Shown: positions 1,332 through 43,662 of the stretch, piece after piece
How positions within the stretch are numbered: position 1 is the first letter of the stretch
Layout of the letters: every line of letters starts with the position of its first letter
Virus record (IMG/VR): IMGVR_UViG_3300020477_001008
Location: 1 to 64,000 of that record
Strand: one strand, 5' to 3'
Length of the DNA: 64,000 bases
Position numbers and translations under genes: made by a program
Notes under the pieces: generated by a model
Seen by the model: the letters and a program-made list of their open reading frames with translations, nothing else
What the model was told of the DNA's origin: nothing
Databases searched by the model: none

Positions 1332-1541
1332 ATGAGAAAAAATTATTATGGCAGGCGTAGATGGAATAGCAATACTAGAAATAATAAAAACCACTCAGTA
1401 ACTACGAACAGTAATAGTAAATCTGCGTTTGCGAAATACAAAGAATTATTAGATAGAGCCTCAAAGGCAAACGATCCTATCGAAAAGATAAACCTACAGC
1501 AATCTGCTGAACATTGGCTAAAGGTTAGCAAGGAGGCCTAG
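1332..1541 (+). CDS. DUF4167-like small protein (alphaproteobacterial family)
   Basis: R/N-rich N-terminus followed by KYxxLxxxA...D..E...Q.AEHW helix pattern. Confidence 0.65.
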   Translation: MRKNYYGRRRWNSNTRNNKNHSVTTNSNSKSAFAKYKELLDRASKANDPIEKINLQQSAEHWLKVSKEA

Positions 1542-2764
1542 TGAAACCTTATTGCATAGCACCATTTGTACATTTATATCAACATAGTCAAAGTCTAGAT
1601 GATAGAGTATGTTGCATTAGTAAAATAAACAAAGCTGATGATAATAGAGATAATGGTGTTGATAATAACTTACAAAGCAAATGGGAAAATGAATATTATC
1701 AAGACATTAGAAAAAGAATGTTAGAACCAGGTTCAGATTTACCTGAATGTGCAGAATGTATTAGGTTAGAAAAACAAGGACAAACTAGCGATAGATTAAA
1801 TTTTGAAAGTCGTTTTAAAAATCAATATATAGAATTTAATACTATAACTGGTAACCAATATAACCATCCATTAGATTATGATTTACGTCCAGGAAACTTA
1901 TGTAATTTAGGTTGTAGAATGTGTAGTCCAATGAGTAGTACACAATTAAGTAAAGAATATAAAAAACATAAAGATGATTTTAATGATCTTGTTCCTGAAA
2001 CTTTTTTTACAATGGAAGATGGTTGTGATTGGGACTATAAAGAAAACCTAGATTGGATTAAAGAAAATTTGTTATCAGGTAAAACAAATAGAATTAAATT
2101 CCTTGGCGGTGAACCTACAATAATGCCAGGTGTATTAGAATTACTTGACTTTATGATTGATAATAGTTTAACACGAACATCATTATCTTTTACTACAAAT
2201 TGTACAAATGAAAACAGACATTTTGTTAGTAAAGTATCAAGGTTTACTGATGTATATTTTCATTTTTCAATAGATGGTATTGGTAGAACATTAGAATACA
2301 TTAGACATCCTGCTAAATGGAACAAAATAAATGAAAATATTAGAAAATTATCTTCTAATAAGAGTTGGATAGCACCAATGTGTAATACAACTATTCAAGC
2401 ATATAATATTCATCATTTAAAAGATTATGTTTATTGGTTAAAAGCATTAAACAAAATCAGACACGTAGAACTCAATACAGTAATAATAGATTATCCAAGT
2501 CATATGAGTTATAAAGTACTTCCAGTAGAATATAGAAATTGCTATATTGTTGATTTAATTAATGATCCTATAATGCAATGGGACGTAATAAAACAATCTA
2601 ATTTAAGAGCAAACCTTAAAACTATATTAGAAGATAAAACTGTTGAAGGTACTGATAAGTTTATAGAGCATACTAAAGCATTTGATAAAGTTAGGAATCA
2701 AAATATAAAAAATTATATTCCACAACTAGCTAGTTATTTTGGTCTTTCAAATAGGTATCAGTAA
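1541..2764 (+). CDS. Radical SAM protein with N-terminal SPASM/Twitch-like Cys cluster
   Basis: CNLGCRMC (CxxxCxxC), GGEP, N-terminal CxxP...CC...CxxC. Confidence 0.9.
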   Translation: MKPYCIAPFVHLYQHSQSLDDRVCCISKINKADDNRDNGVDNNLQSKWENEYYQDIRKRMLEPGSDLPECAECIRLEKQGQTSDRLNFESRFKNQYIEFNTITGNQYNHPLDYDLRPGNLCNLGCRMCSPMSSTQLSKEYKKHKDDFNDLVPETFFTMEDGCDWDYKENLDWIKENLLSGKTNRIKFLGGEPTIMPGVLELLDFMIDNSLTRTSLSFTTNCTNENRHFVSKVSRFTDVYFHFSIDGIGRTLEYIRHPAKWNKINENIRKLSSNKSWIAPMCNTTIQAYNIHHLKDYVYWLKALNKIRHVELNTVIIDYPSHMSYKVLPVEYRNCYIVDLINDPIMQWDVIKQSNLRANLKTILEDKTVEGTDKFIEHTKAFDKVRNQNIKNYIPQLASYFGLSNRYQ

Positions 2765-10812: not shown

Positions 10813-10820
10813 ATGTAAAA

Positions 10821-10868
10821 CGTTCATCTGGTATAACAGACGGAAGTAAGCACTAGCTGAAGGAACGC
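10821..10868 (+). ncRNA. Glutamine riboswitch (glnA / Downstream-peptide class)
   Basis: P1 CGTTC/GAACG, P2 TCTG/CAGA, junction CGGAAGTA, P3 AGC/GCT, GAA E-loop; 25 nt upstream of an ORF. Confidence 0.85.
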
Positions 10869-10893
10869 ACTTAACTGTAAAAAGGAGAGTGTT

Positions 10894-11978: not shown

Positions 11979-12215
11979 TTATTCTGAATAATCCGGAAGA
12001 GGGCCACCATACTTCTTACCTTTGACTGTTTTATGGCCCACAGTCTTTCTTTTACCATCTAGCTTGTGTTCACGATCCGAATCACGTCTACGCAATCCTT
12101 TTGATCTACAGCTTGATAACCAGCTGGCAGGTAGCTCTGAATCAGGCTTACCACTCTTACACACTTTGGTAGGGGCTGGTCCTATATTGTCTGTTATGAT
12201 GTCTGACACTTTCAT
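11979..12215 (-). CDS. Small basic late protein (possible internal head protein)
   Basis: Perfect TATAAATA at 12221-12228 on the - strand; MKVSDIIT N-terminus resembles T4-type capsid-targeting leaders. Confidence 0.65.
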   Translation of the reverse strand: MKVSDIITDNIGPAPTKVCKSGKPDSELPASWLSSCRSKGLRRRDSDREHKLDGKRKTVGHKTVKGKKYGGPLPDYSE

Positions 12216-12234
12216 ACAAGTATTTATAAACGGT

Positions 12235-12278
12235 TCACGACAGTAATTAGAGTTGCAAAACCAAAAGGGCTCGCTATT
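12235..12278. repeat. Bipartite repeat copy 3
   Basis: TCACGAC-agtaattagagttgcaaaaccaaa-AGGGCTCGCTATT. Confidence 0.9.
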
Positions 12279-12408
12279 GCCTTTAAGGGGTGGGGTGGTT
12301 TAAATGTACTACCTTTGTACTTTTGAACTTAAACCATTGATTCTTGGTGGTTTGGGGCCTGTTTTGTTTGTTTCAGTCTGCGTAGTCCCGGCCCCTGAGA
12401 CGAAGTTT

Positions 12409-12771
12409 CTAGTTTAGATATAATGGTCCAGTCCACTTAACAATGTAGCCTGGCACAAACACATTACCTCTAGGCTGATTGAGTGCTGGTGCATTCCAAC
12501 CTGCCGCTTTAAGGATGTCTCCTCTTTTGAAGTGTTTGAAGTCGTGCTTATTAACGAAGCCCCAAACTGATCTGCTTCCACCTCTATCGTGTCTTATGAT
12601 TTTGATGAACTTCTGTCTTGAAGAATCTTTTACTTCCCAACCATCATCAAACTCTTTAATCATATTCTCGTTTACTTCAGGTATGTCACCGTTTGCTTTG
12701 GTGTTCCATTTACGATAGTCTGCTTTAGCTTGATCTATCATTGTGTCTATTGCTTTGTATATGTCGTCCAT
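12409..12771 (-). CDS. Conserved-looking phage early protein (GDILKAAGWNAPA..RGN motif)
   Basis: SD GAGGA; own promoter at 12795-12822 (-). Confidence 0.75.
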   Translation of the reverse strand: MDDIYKAIDTMIDQAKADYRKWNTKANGDIPEVNENMIKEFDDGWEVKDSSRQKFIKIIRHDRGGSRSVWGFVNKHDFKHFKRGDILKAAGWNAPALNQPRGNVFVPGYIVKWTGPLYLN

Positions 12772-12794
12772 ATTATCCTCTCTGTTATATTATT

Positions 12795-12822
12795 AATATA
12801 CAGCAGATTGCATATTTGTCAA
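12795..12822 (-). promoter_or_regulatory. Early sigma70-type promoter (divergent)
   Basis: TTGACA-N16-TATATT on the - strand. Confidence 0.7.
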
Positions 12823-12824
12823 CC

Positions 12825-12868
12825 ACAACATATATGCCCTAACTATGGACCTCGATACTACATATAGT
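12825..12868. promoter_or_regulatory. Tandem NrdR-box-like pair (32-bp spacing)
   Basis: ACAACATATATG (12825) and ACTACATATAGT (12857) versus NrdR core aCwAtATaTwGt. Confidence 0.6.
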
Positions 12869-12894
12869 CTTTTATGTGCGTCAGCATAACACAC

Positions 12895-12922
12895 TTGCGT
12901 TTTTTAGCTTTGCTGGTATACT
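12895..12922 (+). promoter_or_regulatory. Promoter of the TC/CC-free operon (atypical -35)
   Basis: TTGCGT-N16-TATACT with TG. Confidence 0.65.
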
Positions 12923-12942
12923 AATAACAAAAAGGAGCAGTT

Positions 12943-13344
12943 ATGATATTATATACAAAACAATTTAGTAATGCAGTTAGACAAGTTATAAAGAAGCATA
13001 GAGCAAAAGTGCATACGAGATACACATTTGGCACGAGTGGGAGTTGCAGTATGTTTACTAGCGAAGGCAAAAGAAAGATTAGCTTTAACTGTATAGGAAC
13101 TAGAAAACAATTTAACTTAATAAGAAAAGATTTAGTTAAGTTGTTTGCAGGAACTTGGCAACAAAACTTTATGAAGTACAAATGGAACACGGACGGTTGG
13201 CACGATAAAAGAATGTTTAGGATAGAGGGAACTTGTTTGTTTGAGGACAAAACAAAGGAAGAGTTTGCAAAAATAATGAAACAAAGAACACACAACATAT
13301 TGTGGGGCAAGTTGGCAGGTGATACTACAGCTTGTGGAAATTAG
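12943..13344 (+). CDS. Basic, proline-free immediate-early protein
   Basis: SD AAGGAG; no Pro; Ser coded only by AGY. Confidence 0.8.
   Translation: MILYTKQFSNAVRQVIKKHRAKVHTRYTFGTSGSCSMFTSEGKRKISFNCIGTRKQFNLIRKDLVKLFAGTWQQNFMKYKWNTDGWHDKRMFRIEGTCLFEDKTKEEFAKIMKQRTHNILWGKLAGDTTACGN
13292..13335. promoter_or_regulatory. Tandem NrdR-box-like pair (32-bp spacing)
   Basis: acACAACATATTGTgg (13292) and ACTACAGCTTGT (13324), upstream of the -35 at 13349. Confidence 0.6.
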
Positions 13345-13348
13345 GGGG

Positions 13349-13376
13349 TTGACAAGTAGCAATACTATGTTAAATT
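13349..13376 (+). promoter_or_regulatory. Early promoter
   Basis: TTGACA-N16-TAAATT with TG. Confidence 0.75.
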
Positions 13377-13382
13377 AATATT

Positions 13383-13505
13383 ATGGTTAGCAAGTTAATA
13401 AAATTAATTACAAGTTATTACGCAAGTTATTATGCAAGTATTATTTTAATATTTGTAATACTAGCAATAATAGGTGCGTTGCTAACAGCTTGTACACTAA
13501 TATAG
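13383..13505 (+). CDS. Membrane microprotein, paralog A (MVSKLIKLITSYYASYYASIILIFVILAIIGALLTACTLI)
   Basis: Probably leaderless; aligns ungapped with 16123 and 23940 ORFs. Confidence 0.65.
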   Translation: MVSKLIKLITSYYASYYASIILIFVILAIIGALLTACTLI

Positions 13506-13515
13506 AGAGGACTAT

Positions 13516-14139
13516 ATGCAAAAGCAAAAGTATACAAAAGAAGAGATAGAAGCAGGCGTTAAGTTTTTACAAAACGCAAATGTAAACTTTGACTATGACA
13601 AAGACGATATGCAAATTAACTTTAGTATAGACGTTGGTTGCAGAATATGGACGGACGGTAGTAGCATATGGAGTAGGGGAGTTGTTAAAGGAGTTAAAGT
13701 TAGTAGCTTGAGTTTAACAGCAACACACAGCAAAGATATGTACGACAAAAAGGATTGGGCAAGTTTAAAGGACGAGGACTTGTACTGGAGTGGTGGACTT
13801 ACGGGTTATGCTTTTTACGATGGTAGTGGCAAAGACGGAACGTGGTACGATGGCGTTGACGACGAAAGTGCATTAATTAATAGGAACACTAGTAAACATA
13901 GCGACGGCTTAATTTACACGGACGACGGCTTTGTTAAAAATTTAATAAAGTACTTAAGAGACGAGTGTAGCTTTGATACTAGCTTTACAGACTTAACAAA
14001 GTTTTTGGACTTTAGCTATAGCGAACAAGGGATGCAGGATATGGAAACTGTAAACTTTGACGTGGAAATGGACGGGGACTTTTGGATTAAGTGTAATGAC
14101 GAGCTAGTTAAGTTTTTACATAACAAAAAAGTAGCTTAA
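13516..14139 (+). CDS. Acidic, proline-free immediate-early protein (207 aa, ends -VA)
   Basis: SD GAGAGG; no Pro. Confidence 0.85.
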   Translation: MQKQKYTKEEIEAGVKFLQNANVNFDYDKDDMQINFSIDVGCRIWTDGSSIWSRGVVKGVKVSSLSLTATHSKDMYDKKDWASLKDEDLYWSGGLTGYAFYDGSGKDGTWYDGVDDESALINRNTSKHSDGLIYTDDGFVKNLIKYLRDECSFDTSFTDLTKFLDFSYSEQGMQDMETVNFDVEMDGDFWIKCNDELVKFLHNKKVA

Positions 14140-14348
14140 TGAGTACACGTTACAGATACGACAAGGCAACGGACAATTACGTTGAGGACGAATGGCAAGG
14201 TACTATACTAGAACAATGCGAAGCACTTGTACTAGCATTAAAGGAAGAAAGTGCTACAGAAGACAATGTAGCACGAAAGGAAGAATTGGAAATGCTAGTA
14301 GGGGAAATAGAATATAGAATAGGAGCAGGAGGAAACTATTTAATTTAA
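14139..14348 (+). CDS. Small acidic proline-free protein
   Basis: TAATG coupling. Confidence 0.7.
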   Translation: MSTRYRYDKATDNYVEDEWQGTILEQCEALVLALKEESATEDNVARKEELEMLVGEIEYRIGAGGNYLI

Positions 14349-14354
14349 TATGAT

Positions 14355-14397
14355 ACTAGTTGTAGTGTTAGCTTTAATAGTTGGCACTACATATAGT
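14355..14397. promoter_or_regulatory. Tandem NrdR-box-like pair (31-bp spacing)
   Basis: ACTAGTTGTAGT (14355) and ACTACATATAGT (14386), upstream of the -35 at 14410. Confidence 0.6.
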
Positions 14398-14470
14398 GAA
14401 TTTAAGCGGTTGACAAATAATAGATGTGTGTTAATTTAAAACAATAAACCAAACGAGAGGTAAAAACAAA

Positions 14471-14761
14471 ATGGTAAAACTAGCAAAAGAATCAATCATA
14501 GACAGTATATTAAAAATTACTGACACTAATGAATTGAGAGAAATCTCAAATGCTTTACACCAACATAGAACTTATATGAATGCTCAAGCAACAAGAAATT
14601 TTGTTGTAGGAGATAAAGTAGAGTTCGAAGGCAGAAGAGGTAGAACTGTACAAGGTGTAGTTAAGAGAGTTAAAATCAAAAACATTATAGTTGAAGAAAC
14701 TAATTCACCGTTTGGTGGAAGATGGAATGTTTCTGCTTCATTACTAAAGAAAGTAGCATAA
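14471..14761 (+). CDS. Early protein with SH3/KOW-like C-terminal domain
   Basis: VGDKVEF..GVVKRV..WNVSASLL; SD GAGAGG. Confidence 0.7.
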   Translation: MVKLAKESIIDSILKITDTNELREISNALHQHRTYMNAQATRNFVVGDKVEFEGRRGRTVQGVVKRVKIKNIIVEETNSPFGGRWNVSASLLKKVA

Positions 14762-14955
14762 TGCCAAAAGGGATTTTAACTAACAAGCAAGTAGACAAAT
14801 TAATAGAACTTGGGCCGGACATAATCGCCGGCCTAGAGTGCAATTTAAATGGCTCAGGATTACCTTGTAGAACTGATAGATTATATGCGGTTGACAAAAT
14901 GATTGCTTATGTTAAACTACACGGATACAAAGTAATAGACAAGGATAAAAAATGA
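14761..14955 (+). CDS. Hypothetical early protein (start MPKGIL)
   Basis: TAATG coupling. Confidence 0.55.
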   Translation: MPKGILTNKQVDKLIELGPDIIAGLECNLNGSGLPCRTDRLYAVDKMIAYVKLHGYKVIDKDKK

Positions 14956-15188
14956 GAGACTTGACTGAACAGCAAAAGGCTTTACTAGACTTACACAAAC
15001 ACATTGGGCGAGCAGAACAGCTTCCTAACAATGTGTGGGAGGAGTTAGTAGAACTAAATGATACAGAAGTTTTGTATCAAAATGTCAATTGTTATTTAGG
15101 AGACAATTACGACAGTGATGCTCCAGTTTATAATTGGAGTAAGAATCAATTAAACTTTAACTTTACAGAGGAGGATGCAAATGCCTAA
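14952..15188 (+). CDS. Hypothetical early protein
   Basis: ATGA overlap; SD AAGGA. Confidence 0.65.
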   Translation: MRDLTEQQKALLDLHKHIGRAEQLPNNVWEELVELNDTEVLYQNVNCYLGDNYDSDAPVYNWSKNQLNFNFTEEDANA

Positions 15189-15399
15189 ACCAAAAAAGCA
15201 AAAGTACGAGTATGAACCATTACCGGAAGATTACATCGACTTTGATGAAGACGGTACTTTACTAGATGAAGAGTCTAGTGATGTATTAGATCAAGATGTA
15301 GAAAGTCTTGATGAACTACAAGAAGACGAAGAGTATAAAGAAGAAGATGGCTACGGCGGAGGCGTCGAAGGCATTTACAATTGGGACGAATGGAATTAA
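15181..15399 (+). CDS. Small acidic early protein
   Basis: SD GAGGAGG. Confidence 0.65.
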   Translation: MPKPKKQKYEYEPLPEDYIDFDEDGTLLDEESSDVLDQDVESLDELQEDEEYKEEDGYGGGVEGIYNWDEWN

Positions 15400-15464
15400 C
15401 AGGTTGACAAAACGTTAACTTGTGTTACATTTAAATTATATTAACTTTTACAGAGAGAGAAAAT

Positions 15465-15893
15465 ATGTCTACAAGATCAAGAATAGCAGTACAGCAACCA
15501 GACGGTAGCTGGGATTCAGTTTATCATCATTACGACGGATATCCTGAAGGAGTAGGTGTTTGCCTAAAGCAACACATTCCAACTTACGACAAAGCAGTTA
15601 AACTAGTAGCAGGTGGCGACATCAGTTACATAGATTGGGACACAGCAGTTGTAAAATATTATGCAAAGCGAAGTAGCTGGGACGATCCTAGAGGCGGTAG
15701 CGACGAAGCTTGGGAAGATGTGGCACCCATTAACAGTAAAACTTTTGCAGATTTAATTGACGTAACTAACGGTAGTAACGGATGTTATCTATACGTATAC
15801 TACTTTCAAACAAACGGTGTGCGTTGTTACAATCCCGATACAAGGGAAGAAGTGCGTATACCAAAATCGAGGAAAGAAGAAGAGGTAGCTTAA
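15465..15893 (+). CDS. Phage early protein of MSTRSxI...YxHxDGYP type
   Basis: MSTRSRIAV, YHHYDGYPEGVG; own promoter. Confidence 0.8.
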   Translation: MSTRSRIAVQQPDGSWDSVYHHYDGYPEGVGVCLKQHIPTYDKAVKLVAGGDISYIDWDTAVVKYYAKRSSWDDPRGGSDEAWEDVAPINSKTFADLIDVTNGSNGCYLYVYYFQTNGVRCYNPDTREEVRIPKSRKEEEVA

Positions 15894-16122
15894 TGTTTAC
15901 AACTTATATCTTTTTAGTGAAGTTAAGTTACTTAGGTCCTGTAGCTTTAATAATATAGAGCTACAGTACTACACGTACAAACAGTATAGCTATCAGATAG
16001 TATCTATAAGCTTAGAAACAACTGTTTGTACACAGTACAATTGTAACAGTATTGCTGAATGCATAATTGTACACAGTATAGTTGTAGGTCGTGGTTGACA
16101 GAATTGAAAAGGATGCTATACT

Positions 16123-20890: not shown

Positions 20891-20970
20891 TTAGTAAAAC
20901 TGGCATAAAATAGGGGGTTGACATAATCCCCTTTTATGTTATTATGATTATATAAAGAGAGAGAGGTTAT

Positions 20971-21183
20971 ATGAAAAAAATAAGTAGAAACTTTTTTAAC
21001 ACATTAGCAACAATATTGATTGCAGTTGGTATTATTATGATTGCAGGTAGCGGTAATGATTGTGATGGTAAGTGTGTTGAGACAGCAAACACAATTAGCG
21101 AAATGTTAATGTATGCAGGAATAGGTTTAAGTTTTTTTATTACTGGTGCATTAGTTTTAATTAGTAATAGAGACGAGGCGTAA
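20971..21183 (+). CDS. Two-TM membrane protein
   Basis: Two hydrophobic helices flanking a CDGKC loop. Confidence 0.7.
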   Translation: MKKISRNFFNTLATILIAVGIIMIAGSGNDCDGKCVETANTISEMLMYAGIGLSFFITGALVLISNRDEA

Positions 21184-21833
21184 TGAAGAAACTTGTAATA
21201 TACTTTTTTTTAATTTATTTGTTCGCTTGGAAGTTAGTTGGTTATGCAGAAGCAAAAGACAAATACGATGAAGTTATTTTTACAGAACAAGCACAATTAA
21301 TTTTTGATACTACTTTACACGATTGGAAAGAGCACTATACAGATATCAATGAAGATCAAGTTAGATGTATGGCACAGAACATTTACTTTGAAGCAAGAGC
21401 AGAAAGTATGTTAGGTAAGACAGCAGTTGGCTTTGTGACTATTAATAGAGTTAATGATGATAGATGGCCTAACACCATTTGTAAAGTTGTTCATCAAGGA
21501 CCGCACAGAGAAAGTTGGAAAACTAAACAAGATGAGACACTAGCAGATGAAGATAGAATTTATTATCCTAGAAAGCACAGATGTCAATTCAGTTGGTATT
21601 GTGATGGTAAGAAAGATATTATTTGGGCAAACTATTCAGACGGTAGAACAATAGAACAGAATGCTAGAGCTTGGTTTGATAGTATAGTGATTGCACTAGC
21701 AGTTATGACTGGGCACGTCAACGATAACACAGACGGCAGTTTATACTATTACAATCATCACCTAGTATATCCTACTTGGGCTGATACACAAGAACTAAAA
21801 GTGATTATAGGTAATCACACATTTATGAGGTAA
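21183..21833 (+). CDS. SleB-like cell wall hydrolase (Hydrolase_2)
   Basis: NIYFEARAE, NRV...WPNTICKVV, CQFSWYCDG, IGNHTF; signal peptide. Confidence 0.9.
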   Translation: MKKLVIYFFLIYLFAWKLVGYAEAKDKYDEVIFTEQAQLIFDTTLHDWKEHYTDINEDQVRCMAQNIYFEARAESMLGKTAVGFVTINRVNDDRWPNTICKVVHQGPHRESWKTKQDETLADEDRIYYPRKHRCQFSWYCDGKKDIIWANYSDGRTIEQNARAWFDSIVIALAVMTGHVNDNTDGSLYYYNHHLVYPTWADTQELKVIIGNHTFMR

Positions 21834-23652: not shown

Positions 23653-23943
23653 ATGAACAGAGGAGCAATTATGCAAAAAGAAATGTTAAAAGGCCAAGGT
23701 GCTAATCCACTACCATTTGATTGTGTAGTATTGGATAGACCTGAAACGATCAAGAACCCATATAGCGGCGAGTCAGTAGAACTACAACCAGATGCAGTAG
23801 CAGTATATGATTGTATCAAAGGTGCTGAACTATTAGCACAAGGTATAGACGATGGCGGACATCCGTTATGGTGCAAGGTTAGAGAAGGCCTAGATTGGTT
23901 TAGACAATACTATGCCAAAGAGTATATGGTATTGTTAGATTGA
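23653..23943 (+). CDS. Hypothetical early protein (start may be 23671)
   Basis: Own promoter; SD GAGGAG. Confidence 0.7.
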   Translation: MNRGAIMQKEMLKGQGANPLPFDCVVLDRPETIKNPYSGESVELQPDAVAVYDCIKGAELLAQGIDDGGHPLWCKVREGLDWFRQYYAKEYMVLLD

Positions 23944-24056
23944 TTAAAAAGATCATTAAACTGGTAGCCAGTTACTATGCAGGATACATAGGTGGCTGGT
24001 TGCTAGTGTTTACCCTACTAGCGATTGCAGGTGCAATAATCTGTATCACTTGCTAG
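23940..24056 (+). CDS. Membrane microprotein, paralog C (MIKKIIKLVASYYAGYIGGWLLVFTLLAIAGAIICITC)
   Basis: TTGA overlap; aligns with paralog A. Confidence 0.6.
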   Translation: MIKKIIKLVASYYAGYIGGWLLVFTLLAIAGAIICITC

Positions 24057-24129
24057 ACTTTTCAAAATAAAAAAAAGAAAAAAATATTTTTCGACCTCGA
24101 CCGTGTATATGCGTCTGGGGTCGGAAACC

Positions 24130-24507
24130 TGAGAATGGGGCTAACGATTGCTAATAAAAAAAGTGGGCTATTATATAGGCGGCGAGATAAAAAGGGCTAT
24201 ATGCAATAGAGGTAAAAGCGAATGCTTTTTAAACTAAAGCACTTGCTTTGGTTTAGACTAGGAAAACAAATGTGGTTGAGGAAACTTGGTTGCTAAAAAA
24301 ATTACGCAGTAAAATTTTATGGGCTAGTGTATAGGCGACGGACTTATATGCATAGCTGATATGGTTAGGTATGCAAAACTAACATAACGGACTTATATGC
24401 AGTTAAAACGTACTTTAATACATTAGAAGCACTTTGATACTACTGAATATGGTTATGACGCTTAAACAGAAGGATATGCACGTTTAAAGGCGGTATTTAC
24501 AACGTAC
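24130..24507 (+). other. Second TC/CC-free tract (apparently non-coding)
   Basis: All Cs (about 48 by hand count) preceded by a purine; repeats (CGGACT)TATATGCA. Confidence 0.85.
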
Positions 24508-24946
24508 CTACCATTAGATCCTGTGGATAGTAAAAAGAACCCTAGAGCATAAGAATACTGTGGATCTCTCGGGCTAGTCAACACTTGAGCGAAGCGAATG
24601 CTTATAAGGGTTATTCAATATAACCACTGTGTCTACTGTATACCACTAGTTGTGAAAAGTTCAGCCCACCCAATTCCAAGGATCACTATAACGTTCCAAT
24701 TCACTTTTATATGGCTTTGCACTCAAACGTAGTACTATTACAAAACCAATAATAAGGATATAAAGCGTCATATAAAGTATATATGATTAACCAGGGTTAG
24801 AACACCTTTAGCTACTGTCAGAACGGTGGATTGTTCCTAGAGCTGAAAGCGAAAGGCTGACCGTACTATTAAGTGGTAGTTAACTAGCTTGAAAAATCGT
24901 TCGTACACATAAAAATTAATACTAATACATCTCTATTAAAATATAA

Positions 24947-25115
24947 CACATACACATATTAGTAAAAATATATCGCGGCATACACATACAGCAAATAATA
25001 AAAAACACATACGCCAAAATTTTTAAACGCATACACACCTCTAAAATAAAAAATCGCATACAAACCTATGTAAAAATACACATACACATACATAAAAAAA
25101 TAGGACGCATACACA
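24947..25115 (+). repeat. Iteron-like (C/G)CATAC repeats separated by A-tracts
   Basis: CATAC at 24949, 24979/85, 25008, 25030, 25057, 25081/87, 25108. Confidence 0.75.
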
Positions 25116-25166
25116 ATTGGCTGTATAATAGCTTGACTTTTAAGCAATATATGTTATATTACTACT

Positions 25167-29479: not shown

Positions 29480-30661
29480 CTATCTGATTTTAATGATATT
29501 CATTAGCTCTGATAACTCAGGAAACGTTTTATCAAATGACTCTACTCTTACTAAATCCATTCTGTATATGTGCCTCTTAAACTCACCTATTTTATTACTA
29601 CTATCGCTGTTTTCCATAAATTGAATTACTTGGTTGAATCCTTTATAATTATAGTCTAAAAGCCTATCTTTTACAACCTCTTTTAAGAAGCTTGGTAATG
29701 TAGAGATGTTATAATGCTTGGGTTCGTGTAATGTATTTAGGTATACTTTCATACCAAAATTATCAGTCCAGTCTATGAATTCAGGCAAGTAAAAAGCATT
29801 AAAAATATTAACAGTATGACATATAGATAAATCTAGCTTATTTGATTCATATGTTTGCCACACTTCTAAATTCTTCAGTACTTGCTCCCATTTAGCTGGG
29901 TGTCTTTGGTATTCAAATTGTTTACCTATACCATCGATACTAAAATGCACATCAACATATTTGAAATGCGGAAATATATTATCAAGAGCATCTAATGGCA
30001 ATTGTGTTCCATTTGTGTTATAGTGTAAGCTGATTTTATGTGCGTGTCCTTGTTTTATAATCTTATGTAAAAGATCCAAATGTTCTTTTATCATAAACGG
30101 TTCACCACCTGTAAAATCCAAATGCTCTAGTACAGGAATTAGTGATTCAACATTTTTCCAAAACACTTCTGATTTTTCTGGCCAATCAAGTCTTTCATAA
30201 AACTTAATATCTTTATCAATTATATCATATTTTCTTTGTTCTGAAATCCATTTAGATGAGTATTGTGGAGAACAAATTCTGCATTTAAGATTACATATAT
30301 TTCCAAGTTTTAAATCCAAATATCTAGGAGCAGATTCTTCCCATATGATTTTATCATTAATTAAATGCTTGTATTTTGCATTATCTCTTACTCTTTTAGA
30401 TGCTTTACCCGACATTTCTTCCATCCAACATCTATGGCATCCACGTGGTTGTGTGCCAGATAAAAACCTTTTACGTATAGTAGCTAGTTCTTCACTATTC
30501 CATATTTCTTGGAATTCTTCACGTTGGATTTTATATTCTTGACCATTTTCCTTTTTTAGTGTATCTTTATACATACAGCACGGTTTTACTGTGCCGTTAG
30601 GTTGGACTTCTAAACCAGTCCAAGGAAGAATACAAAAATTTTGAGGTAATTTATTATCCAT
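29480..30661 (-). CDS. Radical SAM/SPASM-Twitch protein
   Basis: CNLKCRIC, GGEP, FCILPW..PCC..CHRC. Confidence 0.9.
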   Translation of the reverse strand: MDNKLPQNFCILPWTGLEVQPNGTVKPCCMYKDTLKKENGQEYKIQREEFQEIWNSEELATIRKRFLSGTQPRGCHRCWMEEMSGKASKRVRDNAKYKHLINDKIIWEESAPRYLDLKLGNICNLKCRICSPQYSSKWISEQRKYDIIDKDIKFYERLDWPEKSEVFWKNVESLIPVLEHLDFTGGEPFMIKEHLDLLHKIIKQGHAHKISLHYNTNGTQLPLDALDNIFPHFKYVDVHFSIDGIGKQFEYQRHPAKWEQVLKNLEVWQTYESNKLDLSICHTVNIFNAFYLPEFIDWTDNFGMKVYLNTLHEPKHYNISTLPSFLKEVVKDRLLDYNYKGFNQVIQFMENSDSSNKIGEFKRHIYRMDLVRVESFDKTFPELSELMNIIKIR

Positions 30662-31405
30662 ATGTTAAATGTCGCTTTTATCGGTTGTAGTTGGACGCAA
30701 GGTTACAATATTCCATATACTAGTACTTATCCGTATATTGTACACGAATTGTTAAACAAATACAAGGTTGAAAACAGAGTAGTTAATGCTGGAAGAAATG
30801 GTTCCAGTTGGGTTACATATCCAAGTACTATAAAATATATTAACGAAACGTATGATGCTGATATATTTGTAGTTCAGCATACAACACCGGACAGAGGTTT
30901 ATTGCAGTTTTCATCTAGCCAGTGGAAGTACCAAAAAATAGCTAGAGATCACGATGTGTATGAAAACTATTTGCAGTTATGGGATAACACACAAAGTTAT
31001 TATCATTTAACAATAGGAATGGCTGAACAAATAATTGCTGATGAAAAATCAGAATTAGTACAACATATTTTTCACGAAATACAACGCAAGAGTACATTAA
31101 CAAAACAACAAATAATTGATAGAGTTTCTTATTGGTATAATCAAGAAAGACATCATCCTCTTAACTTTGAAAAATATACAGAAGCAGTTGAGTATTGTAA
31201 TTATTATATTAAAGATAAAAACAAAAAAATTGTAAATTTATTTTGGTTAGATGATGAGTTTTGTAAATCATTTACAAATCTACCCAATAAAATAGTTGTA
31301 CAAAACGAAATAGATTTTAAACAATATGCAATTGATTCTGGATATCACTTTGATGATAAAGGAAATAAAATATTAGCTGAGGTACTAATACCCCAGCTTT
31401 TATAG
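30662..31405 (+). CDS. SGNH/GDSL-like protein
   Basis: GCSWT, NAGRNG, DSGYH. Confidence 0.7.
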   Translation: MLNVAFIGCSWTQGYNIPYTSTYPYIVHELLNKYKVENRVVNAGRNGSSWVTYPSTIKYINETYDADIFVVQHTTPDRGLLQFSSSQWKYQKIARDHDVYENYLQLWDNTQSYYHLTIGMAEQIIADEKSELVQHIFHEIQRKSTLTKQQIIDRVSYWYNQERHHPLNFEKYTEAVEYCNYYIKDKNKKIVNLFWLDDEFCKSFTNLPNKIVVQNEIDFKQYAIDSGYHFDDKGNKILAEVLIPQLL

Positions 31406-31558
31406 GATTATTTTTTAGCTTTCTTTTTAGGTTTACTCTCAACTTTTTTTGGAGGTTTACCAACTAAAAATTCTGTTAGTGCTTCTAAGTCTTTTATAAC
31501 TTTGTCGATAAATTTGGCCATATTAATCTCCTTGTTAATTGTTTAATAGTATATATGA

Positions 31559-31756
31559 TTATGATTTGTCTTTAGGAACTTTGACCCAACGGTCAACTTC
31601 TGTACCTTTTCTATTAGTATACTCTACTCTTAGAAACTGTGTACCTTTTGGTGCCGAGCCTGCCACAGATTTAAATATTTTTTTAAAGCCTAAGCCTTCT
31701 TTTTCTTGTGTAAACTCTTTATCATCGGTTATTTTAATTTTTATCTTTCTACCCAT
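31559..31756 (-). CDS. Small basic protein (start MGRKIK)
   Basis: ORF track, start adjusted. Confidence 0.6.
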   Translation of the reverse strand: MGRKIKIKITDDKEFTQEKEGLGFKKIFKSVAGSAPKGTQFLRVEYTNRKGTEVDRWVKVPKDKS

Positions 31757-31848
31757 AACTTTACTTATCCACAAAAATTTCGGGGGTACTAACACCCCAG
31801 GTGGTGGCGTTTCGGGTACTGTAGGGGTCTTAAAACAAATCTTTTTTT

Positions 31849-33072
31849 CTATGATTTAGCTATTTTTTCAAGATCTAGCAATTCTGGAAATATATCACGC
31901 CAATTTTCATTTCTTATATTATCTAAACGATTTGTGATTTCATACCAGTCTTTTATTAAGTGAGAGTAGTCAGCTTCATACAAATAACTTATTAGCGATT
32001 CATATCTTGTATGATTAGCATCTGTATTTTCTTTCATCCACGTTTGAGCATTAGTCCATTTCTCTGCAAGTTTATCTTTCATATCTTTTGGTAGTATTTG
32101 TATTCTCAAATGCTCAGGAGTTTGCAAAGGATTTAATAAACTATGTGGACCAACCCATTCCTTTTTAATCCAATCAATATGAAAATCTGAAACGTGAAAA
32201 CTATTAAACACGTCAACACACGACGCAACAAAAAAGAAAGCCCTAGGACATTTTTCAAAAACATTTTTTCTATTTTCTTCAACTTGCTCCCAGCTTTGCC
32301 CAGCACGAAGATATTCACCTCGCTTATGTGTTGCATCTAAACTAGCACCAATTTCTACATATTCAAACTTGTCCCATTCTTTGAATACGTCCATTCCTTT
32401 ATAAATTACTTGGCTAAAGTTTGTATTGTACTTTAGTCTTACGTGAAACATTTTCTTTTCTACTAATTTTTTTAATATTCTATAATGCTCTTCCATTATT
32501 AATGGTTCACCACCGGCAAAATATACTTCTTCTAAACCATCTACATATGGCTCAACTACTTCCCAAAATCTTTTTTCGTCTTTGTATGGTCTAATAACTT
32601 TAGAGTGATCTGGTTTACTGAATAATTTAGTTTGGTCTTCATACCAGCTTGATGATAAATCTGGACCACAAGTTCTACATTTAAAGTTACATAAGTTACT
32701 AAATCTAAAATCAATGTAAGGTAAATTAACTTTGTCAACAGTACCATCTTCTTTAGTTGATTCTACAACATCCCAATGATGATTTAATTTTTCATTAGAC
32801 CAAGTTCTAGTTGTATTAATACTATGTCTTTCTTGTTCGTAACAACGTGTACAGATCTTATTAGCTTTTCCATTTAGTAAGTCTTTACGTAATTGTTTTT
32901 GTTGCGGAGAATTCCAAGCTTGTTCTAATGTTATTTCTTTTAAGTTACCCATTATATCGTTACTATCACTCATACAACAAGTCAATACTCTACCATCTGG
33001 CCACGTGTGTAAATGTGTCCACGGTATCATACAAAAAGTTTTTGATTTAAGTAACTTATCTTTATCTAGCAT
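31849..33072 (-). CDS. Radical SAM/SPASM-Twitch protein
   Basis: CNFKCRTC, GGEP, FCMIPW..CC..CTRC. Confidence 0.9.
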   Translation of the reverse strand: MLDKDKLLKSKTFCMIPWTHLHTWPDGRVLTCCMSDSNDIMGNLKEITLEQAWNSPQQKQLRKDLLNGKANKICTRCYEQERHSINTTRTWSNEKLNHHWDVVESTKEDGTVDKVNLPYIDFRFSNLCNFKCRTCGPDLSSSWYEDQTKLFSKPDHSKVIRPYKDEKRFWEVVEPYVDGLEEVYFAGGEPLIMEEHYRILKKLVEKKMFHVRLKYNTNFSQVIYKGMDVFKEWDKFEYVEIGASLDATHKRGEYLRAGQSWEQVEENRKNVFEKCPRAFFFVASCVDVFNSFHVSDFHIDWIKKEWVGPHSLLNPLQTPEHLRIQILPKDMKDKLAEKWTNAQTWMKENTDANHTRYESLISYLYEADYSHLIKDWYEITNRLDNIRNENWRDIFPELLDLEKIAKS

Positions 33073-34072
33073 TGATTTCGCTTTTCCAACTTGGAATAAG
33101 CAGATTTTCAAACACACTTCTGTTATGAGAAAGTTTTGCTTTTATATCATCTTGTTGATATAATTCTGTCCATTCCTCAGGTGTTTTATGTACAAGAGTT
33201 TCTATCTCGTTCCACATAGCACTATATCTTTCATTGTAAGGTAAACTATCAAATGCTTCGTGGTTATATAATTCTGTGTAAGGTTCAAAGCCATTATCTA
33301 TTAAGAACTTCATTGTATCCTTACAACCGTGAACGATAAAAATTTTATTGTACAAAATTGGTTTCCAAGTTTTTTCTGTTATAAACAAACTAGTATCACT
33401 AACAATACTTTCATTTACTATTTCAAATCCCGCATAGTGATAATTTGGAGGTAATATTTCTTGATTTTGTCCTTCGTCAATTTCTTTACCTGTAAAATCT
33501 AATTTAAGATCATCTCCTTGAAATTTTGGATTAGTAAAATAATGATCAGGCACATTATTACCATATCTATTAATCCAAGATATCTCGCCAAATCCATCTA
33601 ATCCATTATCAAACAAATCAGTGACTAATTTTGCTCTATGTGTTTTTGCCGCTCCATTTAAACAAATAAATCTTCTAGTTTTTCTTTCATATGCTTTGGG
33701 TTGTTTAATACTTTTATTTTGTTTGTTTATTATTGTTCTGGATAGTAATTCAAAAGGTGCTGACACTATGTTTACAGGAAAATCTTTACGTTCAGTTCCT
33801 GCAAACCATTTATCTACATTTTCTTTTAGATTAACATCAGCCATTACTAAACTAGCATTATCTTCAGGCCAACCTTCTAAAGCTTCACGTACATACGGTA
33901 AAAAATTTTCTTTTGTTTGGAAATGTATTTCACCTTCCCACACTCTTTTAATTACAATATGATGTGTTTCTTTTTTATCTTGATTATTACGAATCCAATA
34001 ATTTAGGGCATTAAGTTGTCCTAAAATATCGTGTGTACAATCTAAATCAACTATGTGAAGTTCTTTATTCAT
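33062..34072 (-). CDS. Glycosyltransferase-like protein (E..F.TEK..KP family)
   Basis: FICLNG...HR, NES..FITEKTWKPI, GF. Confidence 0.6.
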   Translation of the reverse strand: MNKELHIVDLDCTHDILGQLNALNYWIRNNQDKKETHHIVIKRVWEGEIHFQTKENFLPYVREALEGWPEDNASLVMADVNLKENVDKWFAGTERKDFPVNIVSAPFELLSRTIINKQNKSIKQPKAYERKTRRFICLNGAAKTHRAKLVTDLFDNGLDGFGEISWINRYGNNVPDHYFTNPKFQGDDLKLDFTGKEIDEGQNQEILPPNYHYAGFEIVNESIVSDTSLFITEKTWKPILYNKIFIVHGCKDTMKFLIDNGFEPYTELYNHEAFDSLPYNERYSAMWNEIETLVHKTPEEWTELYQQDDIKAKLSHNRSVFENLLIPSWKSEINAR

Positions 34073-34539
34073 TTGTTTAATCTCTTTAACATATTTACTC
34101 TTTTTTGATGACGCCCACCTTCAAATTTAGTTTGGAAAAAATCTTCTATCATATATTGTGCTGTATCAGTATCTGTATAATCTGCACCTAAACACATAAC
34201 ATTCATATCGTTGTGTTCACGTGCTTGTTCAACATCATACCTATCTCTACAAACTACTGCTCTAATATTTTGAAATCTATTAGCCGCAATACAAACACCA
34301 AAACCAGATCCACATATTAAAATTCCGTGTGTATATATGTCAAATGTTTCACCAAACTTTTTAACATAATTAGGATAATCACATTTATCATTTGTATATG
34401 TTCCTACGTCTTGCATAACAGCAATTGGAAATGGTCCTTCATTATCGCTGTTAACAGGACACACCCAATCCATTAATTCATTTTTTAATTCAAGTCCTCT
34501 ATGGTCCGATCCCCACAATAAATCTATTGTTTTAGCCAT
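34069..34539 (-). CDS. rpiB: Ribose-5-phosphate isomerase B
   Basis: GSDHRG, DYP, ICGSGFG, AREHND.NV, FEGGRH. Confidence 0.9.
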   Translation of the reverse strand: MAKTIDLLWGSDHRGLELKNELMDWVCPVNSDNEGPFPIAVMQDVGTYTNDKCDYPNYVKKFGETFDIYTHGILICGSGFGVCIAANRFQNIRAVVCRDRYDVEQAREHNDMNVMCLGADYTDTDTAQYMIEDFFQTKFEGGRHQKRVNMLKRLNK

Positions 34540-36597: not shown

Positions 36598-36609
36598 TGG
36601 ATATATTCT

Positions 36610-37557: not shown

Positions 37558-37741
37558 CTTTGCCAGACTCTTTAAAGTCTATGTCAATTCTCTTTTCAAC
37601 ATCTTTTTCATTAAAAATGCTAGTTGCAATAACTGTTGTAATTGCTAACATTGGCATAGTATATACCATAGCTTCTGTCCATATCGCAATACTATATGTT
37701 GGTATTGCTATAATTAATATTTTATAAATTAATTTAACCAT
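37550..37741 (-). CDS. Small two-TM membrane protein
   Basis: Hydrophobic; overlaps neighbours. Confidence 0.55.
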   Translation of the reverse strand: MVKLIYKILIIAIPTYSIAIWTEAMVYTMPMLAITTVIATSIFNEKDVEKRIDIDFKESGKDG

Positions 37742-43659: not shown

Positions 43660-43662
43660 ATT

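What the first reader, a model, noticed from the sequence alone, without database searches (positions are those of the whole stretch)
12883..14449. 1.57-kb strand-specific TC/CC-free 'launch pad' operon at the start of the early region
Seen: between the TC at 12881-82 and the CC at 14449-50, every C on the + strand (about 185 by hand count) follows A or G. TT, CT, CG, GA and GG remain common on +, so only the template (-) strand lacks GA and GG. The exclusion ignores reading frame and covers codon junctions and intergenic DNA. It forces zero proline, AGY-only Ser and no TTC/ATC/GTC/CTC codons across about 450 codons. Its edges coincide with the promoter at 12895 and the start of the 14410 transcript. 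Established: some phage DpdA enzymes place 7-deazaguanines in context; coliphage CAjan carries preQ0 at GA and GGC. Inference: virion DNA carries a bulky G modification in GA/GG that stalls host RNA polymerase on the template strand, so the first-expressed genes were purged of target sites and bootstrap reading of the rest. Alternatives: escape from a YC-specific RNase or deaminase, or from (6-4) UV lesions at TC/CC.
Basis: partly seen in the sequence, partly recalled or inferred. Interest (0 to 1): 0.95.

Follow-up and report, generated by a model that had tools for sequence, protein, structure and literature searches.

The report
Phage early transcripts purged of YC
A family of marine jumbo phages keeps the sense strand of a few early genes completely free of the dinucleotides TC and CC for 0.7 to over 2.3 kb, even giving up proline, probably so that these RNAs escape a host factor that reads single-stranded pyrimidine-C, of which the termination factor Rho is the only known example.

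Summary
Window 12882-14449 (+) has 187 C and no TC or CC. The tract's own composition predicts 72±6 YC, and the neighbours' YC density gives P~1e-32. The minus strand is normal.

It is not unique to this contig. In 20 of 25 related metagenomic loci the conserved 207-aa gene has zero YC, at 42-95% protein identity, and sits in YC-free runs of 725 to at least 2320 nt. 94 of 120 homologues lack proline. gp133 homologues show 0 YC among 276 C. Four control early-gene families have 34-40% of their C in YC.

The substitutions replace Pro with Asp/Glu/Thr and TCN serine with AGY. That indicates selection, not deamination.

Tracts run from a sigma70-type promoter to the next promoter or a terminator-like hairpin. 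The rare internal YCs are hairpin-paired or single codons. A conserved non-coding island (24129-24507) is also YC-free.

This points to evasion of a reader of single-stranded 5'-YC-3' on RNA. Rho's primary binding clefts bind exactly that, so Rho is the best candidate (about 0.4). An unknown C-specific ssRNA nuclease is the main rival. No published precedent was found.

The parts
12882..14449 (+). Main YC-free tract: 1568 nt of sense strand with 187 C and no TC or CC
   Evidence: Expected 72±6 YC, observed 0. The minus strand is normal (116 TC, 87 CC).
12895..12923 (+). Promoter P1: weak -35 (TTGCGT), 17-nt spacer, extended -10 (TGgTATACT)
   Evidence: Read. The homologous promoter is at the same place in L003. 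It is below the threshold of the consensus scan.
12943..13344 (+). gp133: basic protein (pI 10.1) with no proline and no known family or fold
   Evidence: Homologues have 0 YC among 276 C in six loci (three lineages, L003-5, L008-9 and L130).
13349..13376 (+). Promoter P2: TTGACA-N16-TAAATT with an extended -10 TG
13383..13505 (+). 40-aa membrane ORF with 0 YC. Its paralogue at 23940-24056 has 6 YC.
   Evidence: Homologues in L006, L007 and L164 have 0 YC among 40 C.
13516..14139 (+). gp207: the conserved core cargo. Acidic (pI 4.6), proline-free, 51 invariant residues, novel fold.
14139..14348 (+). gp69: small acidic protein (pI 4.3) with 0 YC
14351..14440 (+). 29-aa hydrophobic ORF. It overlaps a strong hairpin (about 14354-14398) built only from RC and G-U pairs.
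14410..14437 (+). Promoter P3 (TTGACA-N16-TGtTAATTT). The tract ends a few nt into its transcript, at CC 14449.
20931..21223 (+). Second YC-free island. It begins within promoter 20918-20945 and covers the whole 70-aa membrane-protein gene (20971-21183).
   Evidence: A homologue lies inside the main tract of L064. The gene is not YC-free in most other lineages.
24129..24507 (+). Third YC-free island: 379 nt inside a 1.1-kb ORF-less stretch, a candidate structured non-coding RNA
   Evidence: Conserved and also YC-free in L164 (384 nt) and L006 (at least 321 nt); 78% identity. No Rfam family.

Best explanation
A discrete class of early transcripts in this phage lineage is kept free of single-stranded 5'-YC-3'. 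The class always includes the gp207 mRNA and usually those of gp133 and a few small neighbours, and here also a non-coding RNA. This makes the transcripts invisible to a host factor that recognises that dinucleotide on RNA.

The most likely factor is the transcription termination factor Rho. Its hexamer captures nascent RNA through six primary binding clefts, each of which takes one single-stranded YC. A YC-less RNA offers Rho nothing to load on. The transcript is therefore completed even if it is poorly translated or not translated at all, which is the situation of foreign DNA at the start of infection.

The products, acidic gp207 and basic gp133, are then free to act. I infer, without direct evidence, that they neutralise or bypass the same factor, which would explain why the other roughly 25 early genes need no purge.

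Shown: the purge, its strand and frame independence, its conservation under selection, its transcript-like boundaries, and the fact that its exceptions are base-paired or lie inside ORFs.

For: (1) The excluded class is exactly YC. RC is not reduced but raised (C after A 0.20 against 0.16; C after G 0.18 against 0.15). GC content, U content and predicted folding energy equal those of the neighbours. So the pressure is on one dinucleotide class and nothing else.

(2) The literature says each Rho monomer has a 5'-YC binding pocket. Rut sites are arrangements of single-stranded YC, and rut-less RNAs are poorer in YC and richer in G (PMC5314796 introduction; PMC12360218 section 4; PMC9499579). The tract has a C/G ratio of 0.51, against about 0.7 next door.

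(3) The signal is on the sense strand only, ignores reading frame and covers intergenic and leader sequence.

(4) The boundaries look like transcript boundaries. Tracts start just upstream of a sigma70-type promoter. They end at the next promoter, or at a stem-loop whose 3' arm holds the first YCs (L130, L117, L081, L083, L070).

(5) In L003 the YC cluster that interrupts the tract is paired in the stem of a strong hairpin, and in L010 the cluster that ends the tract just after the stop codon is paired likewise. Elsewhere the exceptions are single isolated codons inside the translated ORF (L118, L130, L117). Paired or ribosome-covered YC is what Rho cannot use.

(6) An untranslated, conserved 380-nt RNA-like island is YC-free in three lineages. 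Untranslated RNA is the classic Rho substrate.

(7) Selection is strong and old. There are 0 YC in gp207 genes that are only 66-84% identical in nucleotides. 20 of 25 loci have 0 YC in the gene, with runs up to at least 2320 nt. Controls sit at 34-40%.

(8) The host is probably a proteobacterium, which would have Rho. The giant virion protein and PhoH are nearest to PA5oct-like, Rak2-like, Phosso and Atu_ph07 jumbo phages. The M17 peptidase is nearest to Alphaproteobacteria.
Against: The exclusion is stricter than Rho should need. Loading requires several YCs engaging several monomers (PMC9499579), so isolated YCs ought to be nearly neutral. Yet 1568, 1697 and at least 2320 nt carry none, and proline is given up.

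The last 100 nt or so before terminator-like hairpins are also YC-free, where a rut site should do no harm.

Classical coliphages that infect a host with Rho show no such purge in their first-expressed regions: T7 early 0.091 YC per nt, T5 pre-early 0.076, longest runs 118 nt or less; PA5oct's longest run is 187 nt.

The host is not identified. A glutamine riboswitch and weak similarities to cyanophage genes leave a cyanobacterial host possible, and cyanobacteria lack Rho (PMC12642595).

Nothing links gp207 or gp133 to Rho. Both lack any family or fold match.
Confidence: 0.4

Rival explanations
1. The transcripts evade a ribonuclease that cuts single-stranded RNA at YC, or at C in a pyrimidine context. 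The nuclease could be a host defence or abortive-infection enzyme, for example a HEPN enzyme of the Csx1 type. It could also be a phage-made shut-off RNase whose own operon must be immune. The tract's RNAs survive because they have no site, and gp207 (acidic) could be the inhibitor.
For: An endonuclease is a single-hit agent, so every site has a cost. That fits the near-absolute exclusion and the loss of proline better than Rho does.

The exceptions are base-paired, and the tracts end in protective hairpins. This fits a nuclease specific for single strands, followed by 3' exonuclease trimming.

There are precedents for ssRNA-only, cytosine-specific RNases: SyCsx1 is strictly specific for cytosine and SisCsx1 prefers 5'-C-C-3' (PMC9676260).

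The logic matches ACA-less mRNAs that resist MazF (own knowledge).

The basic gp133 (pI 10.1) and acidic gp207 (pI 4.6) sit together like an RNase and its inhibitor.
Against: No RNase with Y-then-C specificity that spares RC is known. Searches found none.

A purely C-specific enzyme would also select against AC and GC, which are enriched here.

Csx1-type enzymes fire only after CRISPR targeting, which is an odd force for a lineage-wide, gene-specific purge.

Single unpaired Pro or Ser codons are tolerated in L118, L130, L117 and L140.

If the RNase were the phage's own, all later phage mRNAs, which have normal YC, would be hit.

gp133 and gp207 have no nuclease motif and no nuclease fold.
Confidence: 0.3
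2. Virion DNA carries a bulky guanine modification in GA/GG context (DpdA or 7-deazaguanine type) that stalls host RNA polymerase on the template strand. The first-expressed genes have therefore lost template GA/GG.
For: Sense-strand YC absence is formally the same as template-strand GR absence.

The effect would be gene-specific, as observed.

The genome is rich in radical-SAM/SPASM enzymes of unknown role, and only 64 of 243 kb was examined.
Against: CAjan, which really has preQ0 at GA/GGC, has no GR-free or YC-free run longer than 112 nt. Its DpdA, FolE, QueD, QueC and QueE have no hit in the window or in the family loci.

The window's best 'QueC' hit is an NAD synthase (3.5e-50 for NAD_synthase against 0.011 for QueC).

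The tolerated YCs lie in RNA hairpin stems or are lone codons. A template lesion would block the polymerase regardless.

About a dozen promoters with TTGACA at -35 drive neighbouring genes that have normal template GR.

7-deazaguanines sit in the major groove and are not known to stop RNA polymerase (own knowledge).
Confidence: 0.05
3. The tract avoids a host cytosine deaminase (APOBEC-like, TC/CC context) specific for single-stranded DNA. Such an enzyme would attack the displaced non-template strand of heavily transcribed early DNA.
For: The context (TC and CC) and the strand (non-template) fit. One hit could be lethal, which would explain strictness.
Against: Protecting 1.5 kb out of about 15 kb of early DNA transcribed at the same time from the same type of promoter removes only about 10% of the target. 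Selection would then not be gene-specific and all-or-none, as it is.

In the window no intrinsic terminator separates the tract from YC-containing downstream genes.

The pattern is not a deamination footprint. YC is replaced by GA/AC/AG, Pro by Asp/Glu/Thr, TCN by AGY, and YT does not absorb the loss.

I know of no anti-phage DNA deaminase of this kind.
Confidence: 0.07
4. UV avoidance (fewer (6-4) photoproducts at TC/CC), a neutral mutational or compositional quirk, or an assembly artefact.
For: This is a surface-ocean phage, and TC/CC are (6-4) hot spots (own knowledge).
Against: The template strand keeps 203 TC/CC, and both strands keep TT and CT.

The same trait appears in independent assemblies from Tara, JGI, NCBI and Logan at 42-95% protein identity.

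The edges are sharp. The next ORF has 57-59 YC.
Confidence: 0.02

Closest known systems
Rho utilisation (rut) sites and phage anti-Rho strategies (lambda N/Q antitermination, HK022 put RNA, P4 Psu, E. coli Rof/YaeO)
   Same: The recognised unit is the 5'-YC dinucleotide. Untranslated and foreign RNAs are the main victims. Phages are known to need a way round Rho. Rof is a small acidic protein that occludes Rho's primary binding site (PMC12360218).
   Different: Known phage solutions act in trans: proteins or RNAs that modify the polymerase or inhibit Rho. Here immunity would be written in cis into the whole transcript by removing every YC, at the cost of an amino acid. Nothing like this was found in the literature. 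No link between gp207 or gp133 and Rho has been shown.
Cleavage-site-free mRNAs that resist sequence-specific toxin RNases (ACA-less mRNAs and MazF; own knowledge, with reviews PMC7781912 and PMC5408214 listed)
   Same: A short motif is removed from the sense strand regardless of frame, so the transcript survives when other RNAs do not.
   Different: Those motifs are 3-7 nt long and the nuclease is known. Here a degenerate dinucleotide is removed, which is far more costly (a quarter to a third of all C contexts, all Pro, four of six Ser codons), and no cognate nuclease is known.
CpG depletion of vertebrate RNA viruses and HIV-1 to evade the CpG-binding restriction factor ZAP (own knowledge)
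   Same: A virus suppresses a dinucleotide on its RNA to hide from a host RNA-binding factor.
   Different: CpG depletion is genome-wide, partial and statistical. The phage purge is absolute, confined to chosen transcripts and sharply bounded.
Site-poor first-entering DNA (T5 first-step-transfer DNA lacking EcoRI sites; T7 gene 0.3/Ocr expressed first; own knowledge)
   Same: It has the bootstrap logic. The part of the genome expressed first is intrinsically immune to a host barrier, and it encodes the countermeasure. That countermeasure is often an acidic mimic protein like Ocr.
   Different: Restriction-site avoidance is symmetric on double-stranded DNA. This signal is on one strand only. 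T5 FST DNA and T7 early DNA show no YC purge.
Context-specific 7-deazaguanine DNA modification (DpdA; coliphage CAjan, GA and GGC)
   Same: The dinucleotide context GA/GG is the complement of TC/CC.
   Different: No dpdA/que genes were detected, and CAjan has no comparable tract. Modification is on both strands, whereas this purge is on one.

Membership tests
Rho-blind (rut-less) transcript | Absence of single-stranded 5'-YC-3' on the RNA (sense) strand only | tested here: met
   0 YC in 1568 nt of sense strand, with 203 on the antisense strand. YCs at tract interruptions and 3' edges in relatives are paired in hairpin stems; the other exceptions are single codons inside ORFs.
Rho-blind (rut-less) transcript | C<G skew, the opposite of the C>G bubbles of rut sites | tested here: met
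   C 11.9% and G 23.4%, a C/G ratio of 0.51, against about 0.67-0.72 in adjacent early genes. The shift is modest apart from YC.
Rho-blind (rut-less) transcript | The host encodes Rho | tested here: inconclusive
   The nearest phage relatives infect Proteobacteria, and the M17 peptidase is nearest to Alphaproteobacteria. Set against this are the glutamine riboswitch and weak cyanophage similarities. Cyanobacteria lack Rho (PMC12642595). The riboswitch also occurs in pelagiphages and OM43 phages (PMC9004378).
Rho-blind (rut-less) transcript | Rho fails to load or terminate on the RNA, and restoring YC restores termination | not testable with these tools
   Needs in vitro transcription or ATPase assays, or a reporter with bicyclomycin.
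Motif-free mRNA resistant to a sequence-specific endoribonuclease (MazF/ACA type) | The recognition motif is absent from the transcript irrespective of frame | tested here: met
   (36 of 36 codon junctions; leaders and intergenic sequence included)
Motif-free mRNA resistant to a sequence-specific endoribonuclease (MazF/ACA type) | A cognate nuclease with that specificity exists in the host or phage | tested here: not met
   No YC-specific RNase was found in the literature search. The closest are C-specific or C-C-specific Csx1 enzymes (PMC9676260). The tract proteins match no nuclease family or fold. The host genome is unavailable.
DpdA / 7-deazaguanine DNA modification system | dpdA plus the preQ0 pathway genes (folE, queD, queE, queC) in the phage genome | tested here: not met
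   tblastn with the five CAjan proteins found no hit at E<=0.01 in the window or the family loci. Pfam scans of about 40 of the largest ORFs found no TGT, QueD or FolE; the 'QueC' hit is an NAD synthase. Caveat: 179 kb of the contig was not examined.
DpdA / 7-deazaguanine DNA modification system | Known members need a modification-free template for their first genes | tested here: not met
   CAjan's longest YC-free or GR-free run on either strand is 112 nt.
DpdA / 7-deazaguanine DNA modification system | Modified G at GA/GG in virion DNA | not testable with these tools
   Needs LC-MS or nanopore sequencing of virion DNA.
Restriction-site avoidance in first-entering DNA (T5 FST type) | The avoided word is missing from double-stranded DNA, that is, from both strands | tested here: not met
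   The complement GA/GG is abundant on the same strand (203 copies). T5 FST and T7 early DNA show no YC purge.

The most novel reading that the evidence does not exclude
Marine bacteria impose on incoming phage RNA a barrier that reads the single-stranded dinucleotide YC. The barrier is either Rho acting as a front-line silencer of foreign transcripts or an undiscovered YC-specific RNA nuclease. It is severe enough that a whole lineage of jumbo phages has written cis-encoded stealth into kilobases of early transcript, evolving proline-free proteins to do so. The conserved cargo, gp207 (acidic, novel fold) and gp133 (basic), would be a new class of inhibitor of that barrier. This would be the phage counterpart of CpG/ZAP evasion in animal viruses, but absolute and transcript-specific.
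Probability: 0.6. Interest if true: 0.9.

Novelty: new variant of a known kind. Interest (0 to 1): 0.86.

Why it matters
It would be direct evolutionary evidence that Rho is a strong enough anti-phage barrier to override protein sequence. It would also give a ready-made design rule for Rho-insensitive expression cassettes: no YC.

gp207 and gp133 would then be candidate inhibitors with new folds.

Either way, the signature is trivially computable: long sense-strand runs without YC, and proline-free ORFs. It could be used to mine metagenomes for immediate-early or anti-defence genes that have no homology to anything. It also shows that nucleotide-level selection can remove an amino acid from a protein family for long evolutionary periods.

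Tried and rejected
Similarity searches that found nothing. blastn of 12000-16000 against INPHARED phages gave no match. tblastn of gp207 against the same phages gave no match, so there is no cultured relative. The two IMG/VR protein scans and one DNA-pattern scan returned only this contig.

Function of the tract proteins. PHROGs, Pfam, NCBIfam, PADLOC and a PDB sequence profile gave nothing usable. The AlphaFold models (gp207 pLDDT 84, gp133 pLDDT 74) have no Foldseek match at E<=0.001 in PDB or BFVD.

Mutational origin by C-to-U deamination. Rejected, because YC is replaced by GA/AC/AG, Pro by Asp/Glu/Thr and TCN by AGY, and T is not enriched.

UV avoidance. Rejected, because the template strand is rich in TC, CC and TT.

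General property of jumbo-phage or first-entering early regions. Rejected: PA5oct's longest run is 187 nt, T7's 98-104 nt, T5's (including FST DNA) 118 nt and CAjan's 112 nt.

RNA structure or base-composition explanation. Rejected, because folding energy, GC and U equal the neighbours.

Cyanophage host inferred from plastocyanin. Rejected as evidence, because the cupredoxin is only 30% identical to one PetE. The glutamine riboswitch is not diagnostic either (PMC9004378).

'The purge follows gene identity everywhere'. Only partly true. It holds for gp207, gp133 and the 40-aa ORF. The 70-aa membrane gene is YC-free only in the window and L064.

Metagenome pattern scan. Of the 120 loci retrieved, most were chance matches to the degenerate 21-mer. 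27 encode a gp207 relative.

Literature. Searches for a precedent found none.
Full report
1. The observation.
The window is the first 64 kb of a 242,646-bp IMG/VR contig, a jumbo phage with 33% G+C. On the + strand, positions 12882-14449 (1568 nt) hold 187 C and not one follows T or C. They follow A 120 times and G 67 times. GA (116) and GG (87) are plentiful on the same strand, so the complementary strand is not purged. Shuffling the tract's own bases gives 72.2±6.3 YC (minimum 48 in 20,000 shuffles). Using the YC density of the adjacent same-strand early genes, log10 P is -31.8. No other dinucleotide or two-fold degenerate dinucleotide class gives a comparable run on either strand of the window.

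The five ORFs in the tract total 483 codons. They have no Pro, no TCN Ser (31 AGY) and no NTC or NCC codon. All 36 C-initial codons follow a codon ending in a purine, against 61% elsewhere.

One correction is needed. The window holds two more significant islands on the same strand: 20931-21223 (a promoter plus a 70-aa membrane-protein gene) and 24129-24507 (379 nt with no ORF). Gene by gene the trait is all-or-none. The fraction of C preceded by a pyrimidine is 0-0.02 in these units and 0.22-0.50 in the 25 other early genes.

2. Anatomy.
Genes on the + strand from 12.9 to 27.7 kb are small and preceded by sigma70-type promoters, mostly TTGACA-N16 with an extended -10. Genes from 27.7 kb onward lie on the other strand. 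They include five radical-SAM/SPASM enzymes, an M17 peptidase, RpiB and giant virion proteins.

The tract starts 13 nt upstream of a weak -35 with an extended -10 promoter (12895-12923). It contains, in order:
- gp133, a basic protein (pI 10.1);
- a second promoter (13349);
- a 40-aa membrane ORF;
- gp207, an acidic protein (pI 4.6);
- gp69, an acidic protein;
- a 29-aa ORF that overlaps a strong hairpin made only of RC and G-U pairs.
It ends a few nucleotides into the transcript of a third promoter (14410).

GC content, U content and predicted folding energy of the tract RNA are the same as in neighbouring early genes. C after purines is raised, not lowered. The constraint touches YC and little else.

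A 38-aa paralogue of the 40-aa ORF, outside the tract, has 6 YC. The tract copy has none.

3. Relatives.
gp207 has 483 homologues in marine metagenomes, and 94 of the 120 listed have no proline. DNA came from contigs fetched by protein look-up and from a metagenome pattern scan.
- 25 loci carry a near full-length homologue at 42-95% protein identity.
- 20 of these have zero YC in the gene.
- The median YC-free run is 948 nt. The longest are at least 2320 nt (L064, seven ORFs), 1697, 1696 and 1592 nt.
- Background on the same strand is 0.05-0.10 YC per nt.
- The ORF immediately after a tract has 57-59 YC.

gp207 genes that are only 66-84% identical in nucleotides all have 0 YC in about 600 nt. 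gp133 homologues have 0 YC among 276 C and the 40-aa ORF 0 among 40. Four control early-gene families from the same loci have 34-40% of their C in YC, and never zero.

One subclade (L008/L009) has relaxed the constraint in gp207 (16 YC, 3 Pro) but not in gp133. The most distant partial homologues (32-44% identity) have normal YC. The 70-aa membrane gene is YC-free only in the window and in L064, where it lies inside the main tract. Membership of the class therefore varies outside the core.

4. Selection, not mutation.
Where the relaxed clade has YC, the constrained clades have GA, AC, AG, TT and so on. Pro corresponds to Asp, Glu or Thr, and TCN Ser to AGY. YT does not absorb the missing YC. 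This is not the footprint of C-to-U deamination. Independent assemblies from several projects rule out an artefact.

5. RNA level.
Tracts begin at or just upstream of a promoter. They run to the next promoter, or to a stem-loop whose descending arm carries the first YCs. An example is L130, where GGGGAGCA...TGCTCCCC is followed by a U-rich run; L117, L081, L083 and L070 are similar.

The YCs that break a tract in constrained lineages are of two kinds. Some are paired in the stems of strong hairpins: L003 CCCCTC inside the tract, and L010 TCCCTC ending it just after the stop codon. The others are single isolated codons inside the translated gp207 ORF: a Pro at one loop position in L118 and L130, and one TCC in L117.

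The ORF-less island at 24129-24507 is 78% identical across three lineages whose gp207 genes are about 70% identical. It is YC-free in each: 379 nt, 384 nt and at least 321 nt.

A reader that needs single-stranded RNA explains all of this. A lesion or modification on template DNA does not explain the hairpin and single-codon exceptions. A deaminase acting on the non-template strand would not select gene by gene, because about 15 kb is transcribed from the same kind of promoter at the same time.

6. Which reader?
The one factor known to recognise single-stranded 5'-YC-3' is Rho. Each of its six primary binding clefts takes one YC. Rut sites are arrangements of such dinucleotides, and rut-less RNAs are poorer in YC and richer in G (PMC5314796; PMC12360218; PMC9499579). 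Rho preferentially stops untranslated and foreign transcripts, which fits both an immediate-early operon and a non-coding RNA.

The host must then have Rho. Cyanobacteria do not (PMC12642595), and the window carries a glutamine riboswitch. That riboswitch also occurs in pelagiphages and OM43 phages (PMC9004378). The cupredoxin in a relative is only 30% identical to one cyanophage PetE. The giant virion protein, PhoH and the M17 peptidase point to jumbo phages of Proteobacteria and to Alphaproteobacteria. A host with Rho is likely but not shown.

Several points count against Rho:
- The purge is stricter than a multi-site loader should demand.
- It persists right up to terminator-like hairpins.
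- T7, T5 and PA5oct show nothing similar.

A single-hit agent, an endoribonuclease specific for single-stranded YC, fits the strictness better. There are ssRNA-only, C-specific or C-C-specific HEPN RNases (PMC9676260). But none spares RC, and none is known for these hosts. I therefore rate Rho at about 0.4 and an unknown nuclease at about 0.3. The shared core, evasion of an RNA-level reader of single-stranded YC, I rate at about 0.7-0.8.

7. The proteins.
gp207 is well conserved, with 51 invariant columns, many of them Asp, Gly and aromatic residues. It models confidently (pLDDT 84, pTM 0.83) and has no relative in PDB or BFVD. gp133 is basic, models moderately well (pLDDT 74) and has no informative match. 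No library names either protein.

That they counteract the YC reader is an inference from the bootstrap logic: the gene for the countermeasure must itself be immune. The acidic character of gp207 is reminiscent of Ocr, Rof or barstar-type inhibitors (own knowledge). There is no direct evidence.

CAjan carries preQ0 at GA/GGC, yet its longest YC-free or GR-free run is 112 nt. Its five deazaguanine-pathway proteins find nothing in the window or in the family loci. The model is not excluded for the unseen 179 kb, but nothing supports it.

9. Novelty.
Motif avoidance to escape host factors is a known kind of adaptation: restriction sites, ACA and MazF, CpG and ZAP. I found no description of an absolute, strand-specific, transcript-bounded purge of a degenerate dinucleotide over kilobases, conserved across a phage family and enforcing proline-free proteins. 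I file it as a new variant of a known kind, with an unresolved reader.

Noticed in passing
window 10819-10871 (+): Glutamine riboswitch (Rfam RF01739, 61.4 bits, full length) in the region upstream of the early genes. The regulated gene was not identified. The motif is known from cyanobacteria, cyanophages, pelagiphages and an OM43 phage.
   Followed up: partly
window 24060-25130 (+); L164:860-1420 (-); L006:12010-12425 (+): A 1.1-kb stretch without a credible ORF lies just after a 38-aa membrane ORF. Its first roughly 450 nt are 78% identical across three lineages, better conserved than the flanking proteins. It contains repeated GGGCTAT..ATAGGCG(R)CG modules and has no Rfam match. It is a candidate new structured RNA. 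With three sequences, covariation could not be assessed.
   Followed up: partly
window 24920-25110 (+): A cluster of GCATACACA-like direct repeats spaced about 25-35 nt apart, in an A-rich, G-poor stretch just upstream of the promoter at 25133. It looks like an iteron or protein-binding array, perhaps an origin of replication.
   Followed up: no
window 1541-2764 (+) and 29480-47484 (-): An unusual concentration of radical-SAM enzymes: six in total, two with an N-terminal SPASM domain. With them are an M17 leucyl aminopeptidase (Pfam 3.8e-117), RpiB, two DUF6071 proteins, a fatty-acid desaturase and a short-chain dehydrogenase. Relatives also carry paired radical-SAM genes (L003, L008). The pathway is unknown; a peptide, sugar or nucleic-acid modification is possible.
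   Followed up: partly
window 12943-14440 (+): Within the tract, C-ending codons that are allowed are preferred. GAC 27 against GAT 11 (82 against 198 in other early genes), TAC 13 against 10, AAC 12 against 9, and ACG 8 of 32 Thr (9 of 174 elsewhere). This may be compensation for lost C or selection for translation efficiency. It remains unexplained.
   Followed up: no
window 13383-13505 and 23940-24056 (+): Two paralogous small membrane ORFs (40 and 38 aa, sharing a K-L-x-x-S-Y-Y-A motif). One is inside the tract. The other sits directly upstream of the YC-free non-coding island.
   Followed up: partly
window 57689-63829 (-) and PA5oct NC_071039.1 1-61200: The overall layout is a long block of small early genes on one strand, RNA-seq-annotated lncRNAs in PA5oct, then giant virion proteins on the other strand. 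The 33% similarity of the 2046-aa virion protein also places this phage with PA5oct-, Rak2- and Phosso-type jumbo phages.
   Followed up: partly
L078 (Ga0181559_10042726), whole 3.2-kb contig: Outside the 948-nt gp207 tract, the same strand of this contig still has only 0.014 YC per nt, against 0.05-0.10 elsewhere. This suggests a second adjacent YC-poor unit in that lineage.
   Followed up: no
protein P0122 (alignment A4): One homologue joins the first 93 residues of gp133 to a C-terminal part resembling the window's 15465-15893 protein (phrog_1987 family). It may be a natural fusion or a frameshifted or chimeric assembly.
   Followed up: no
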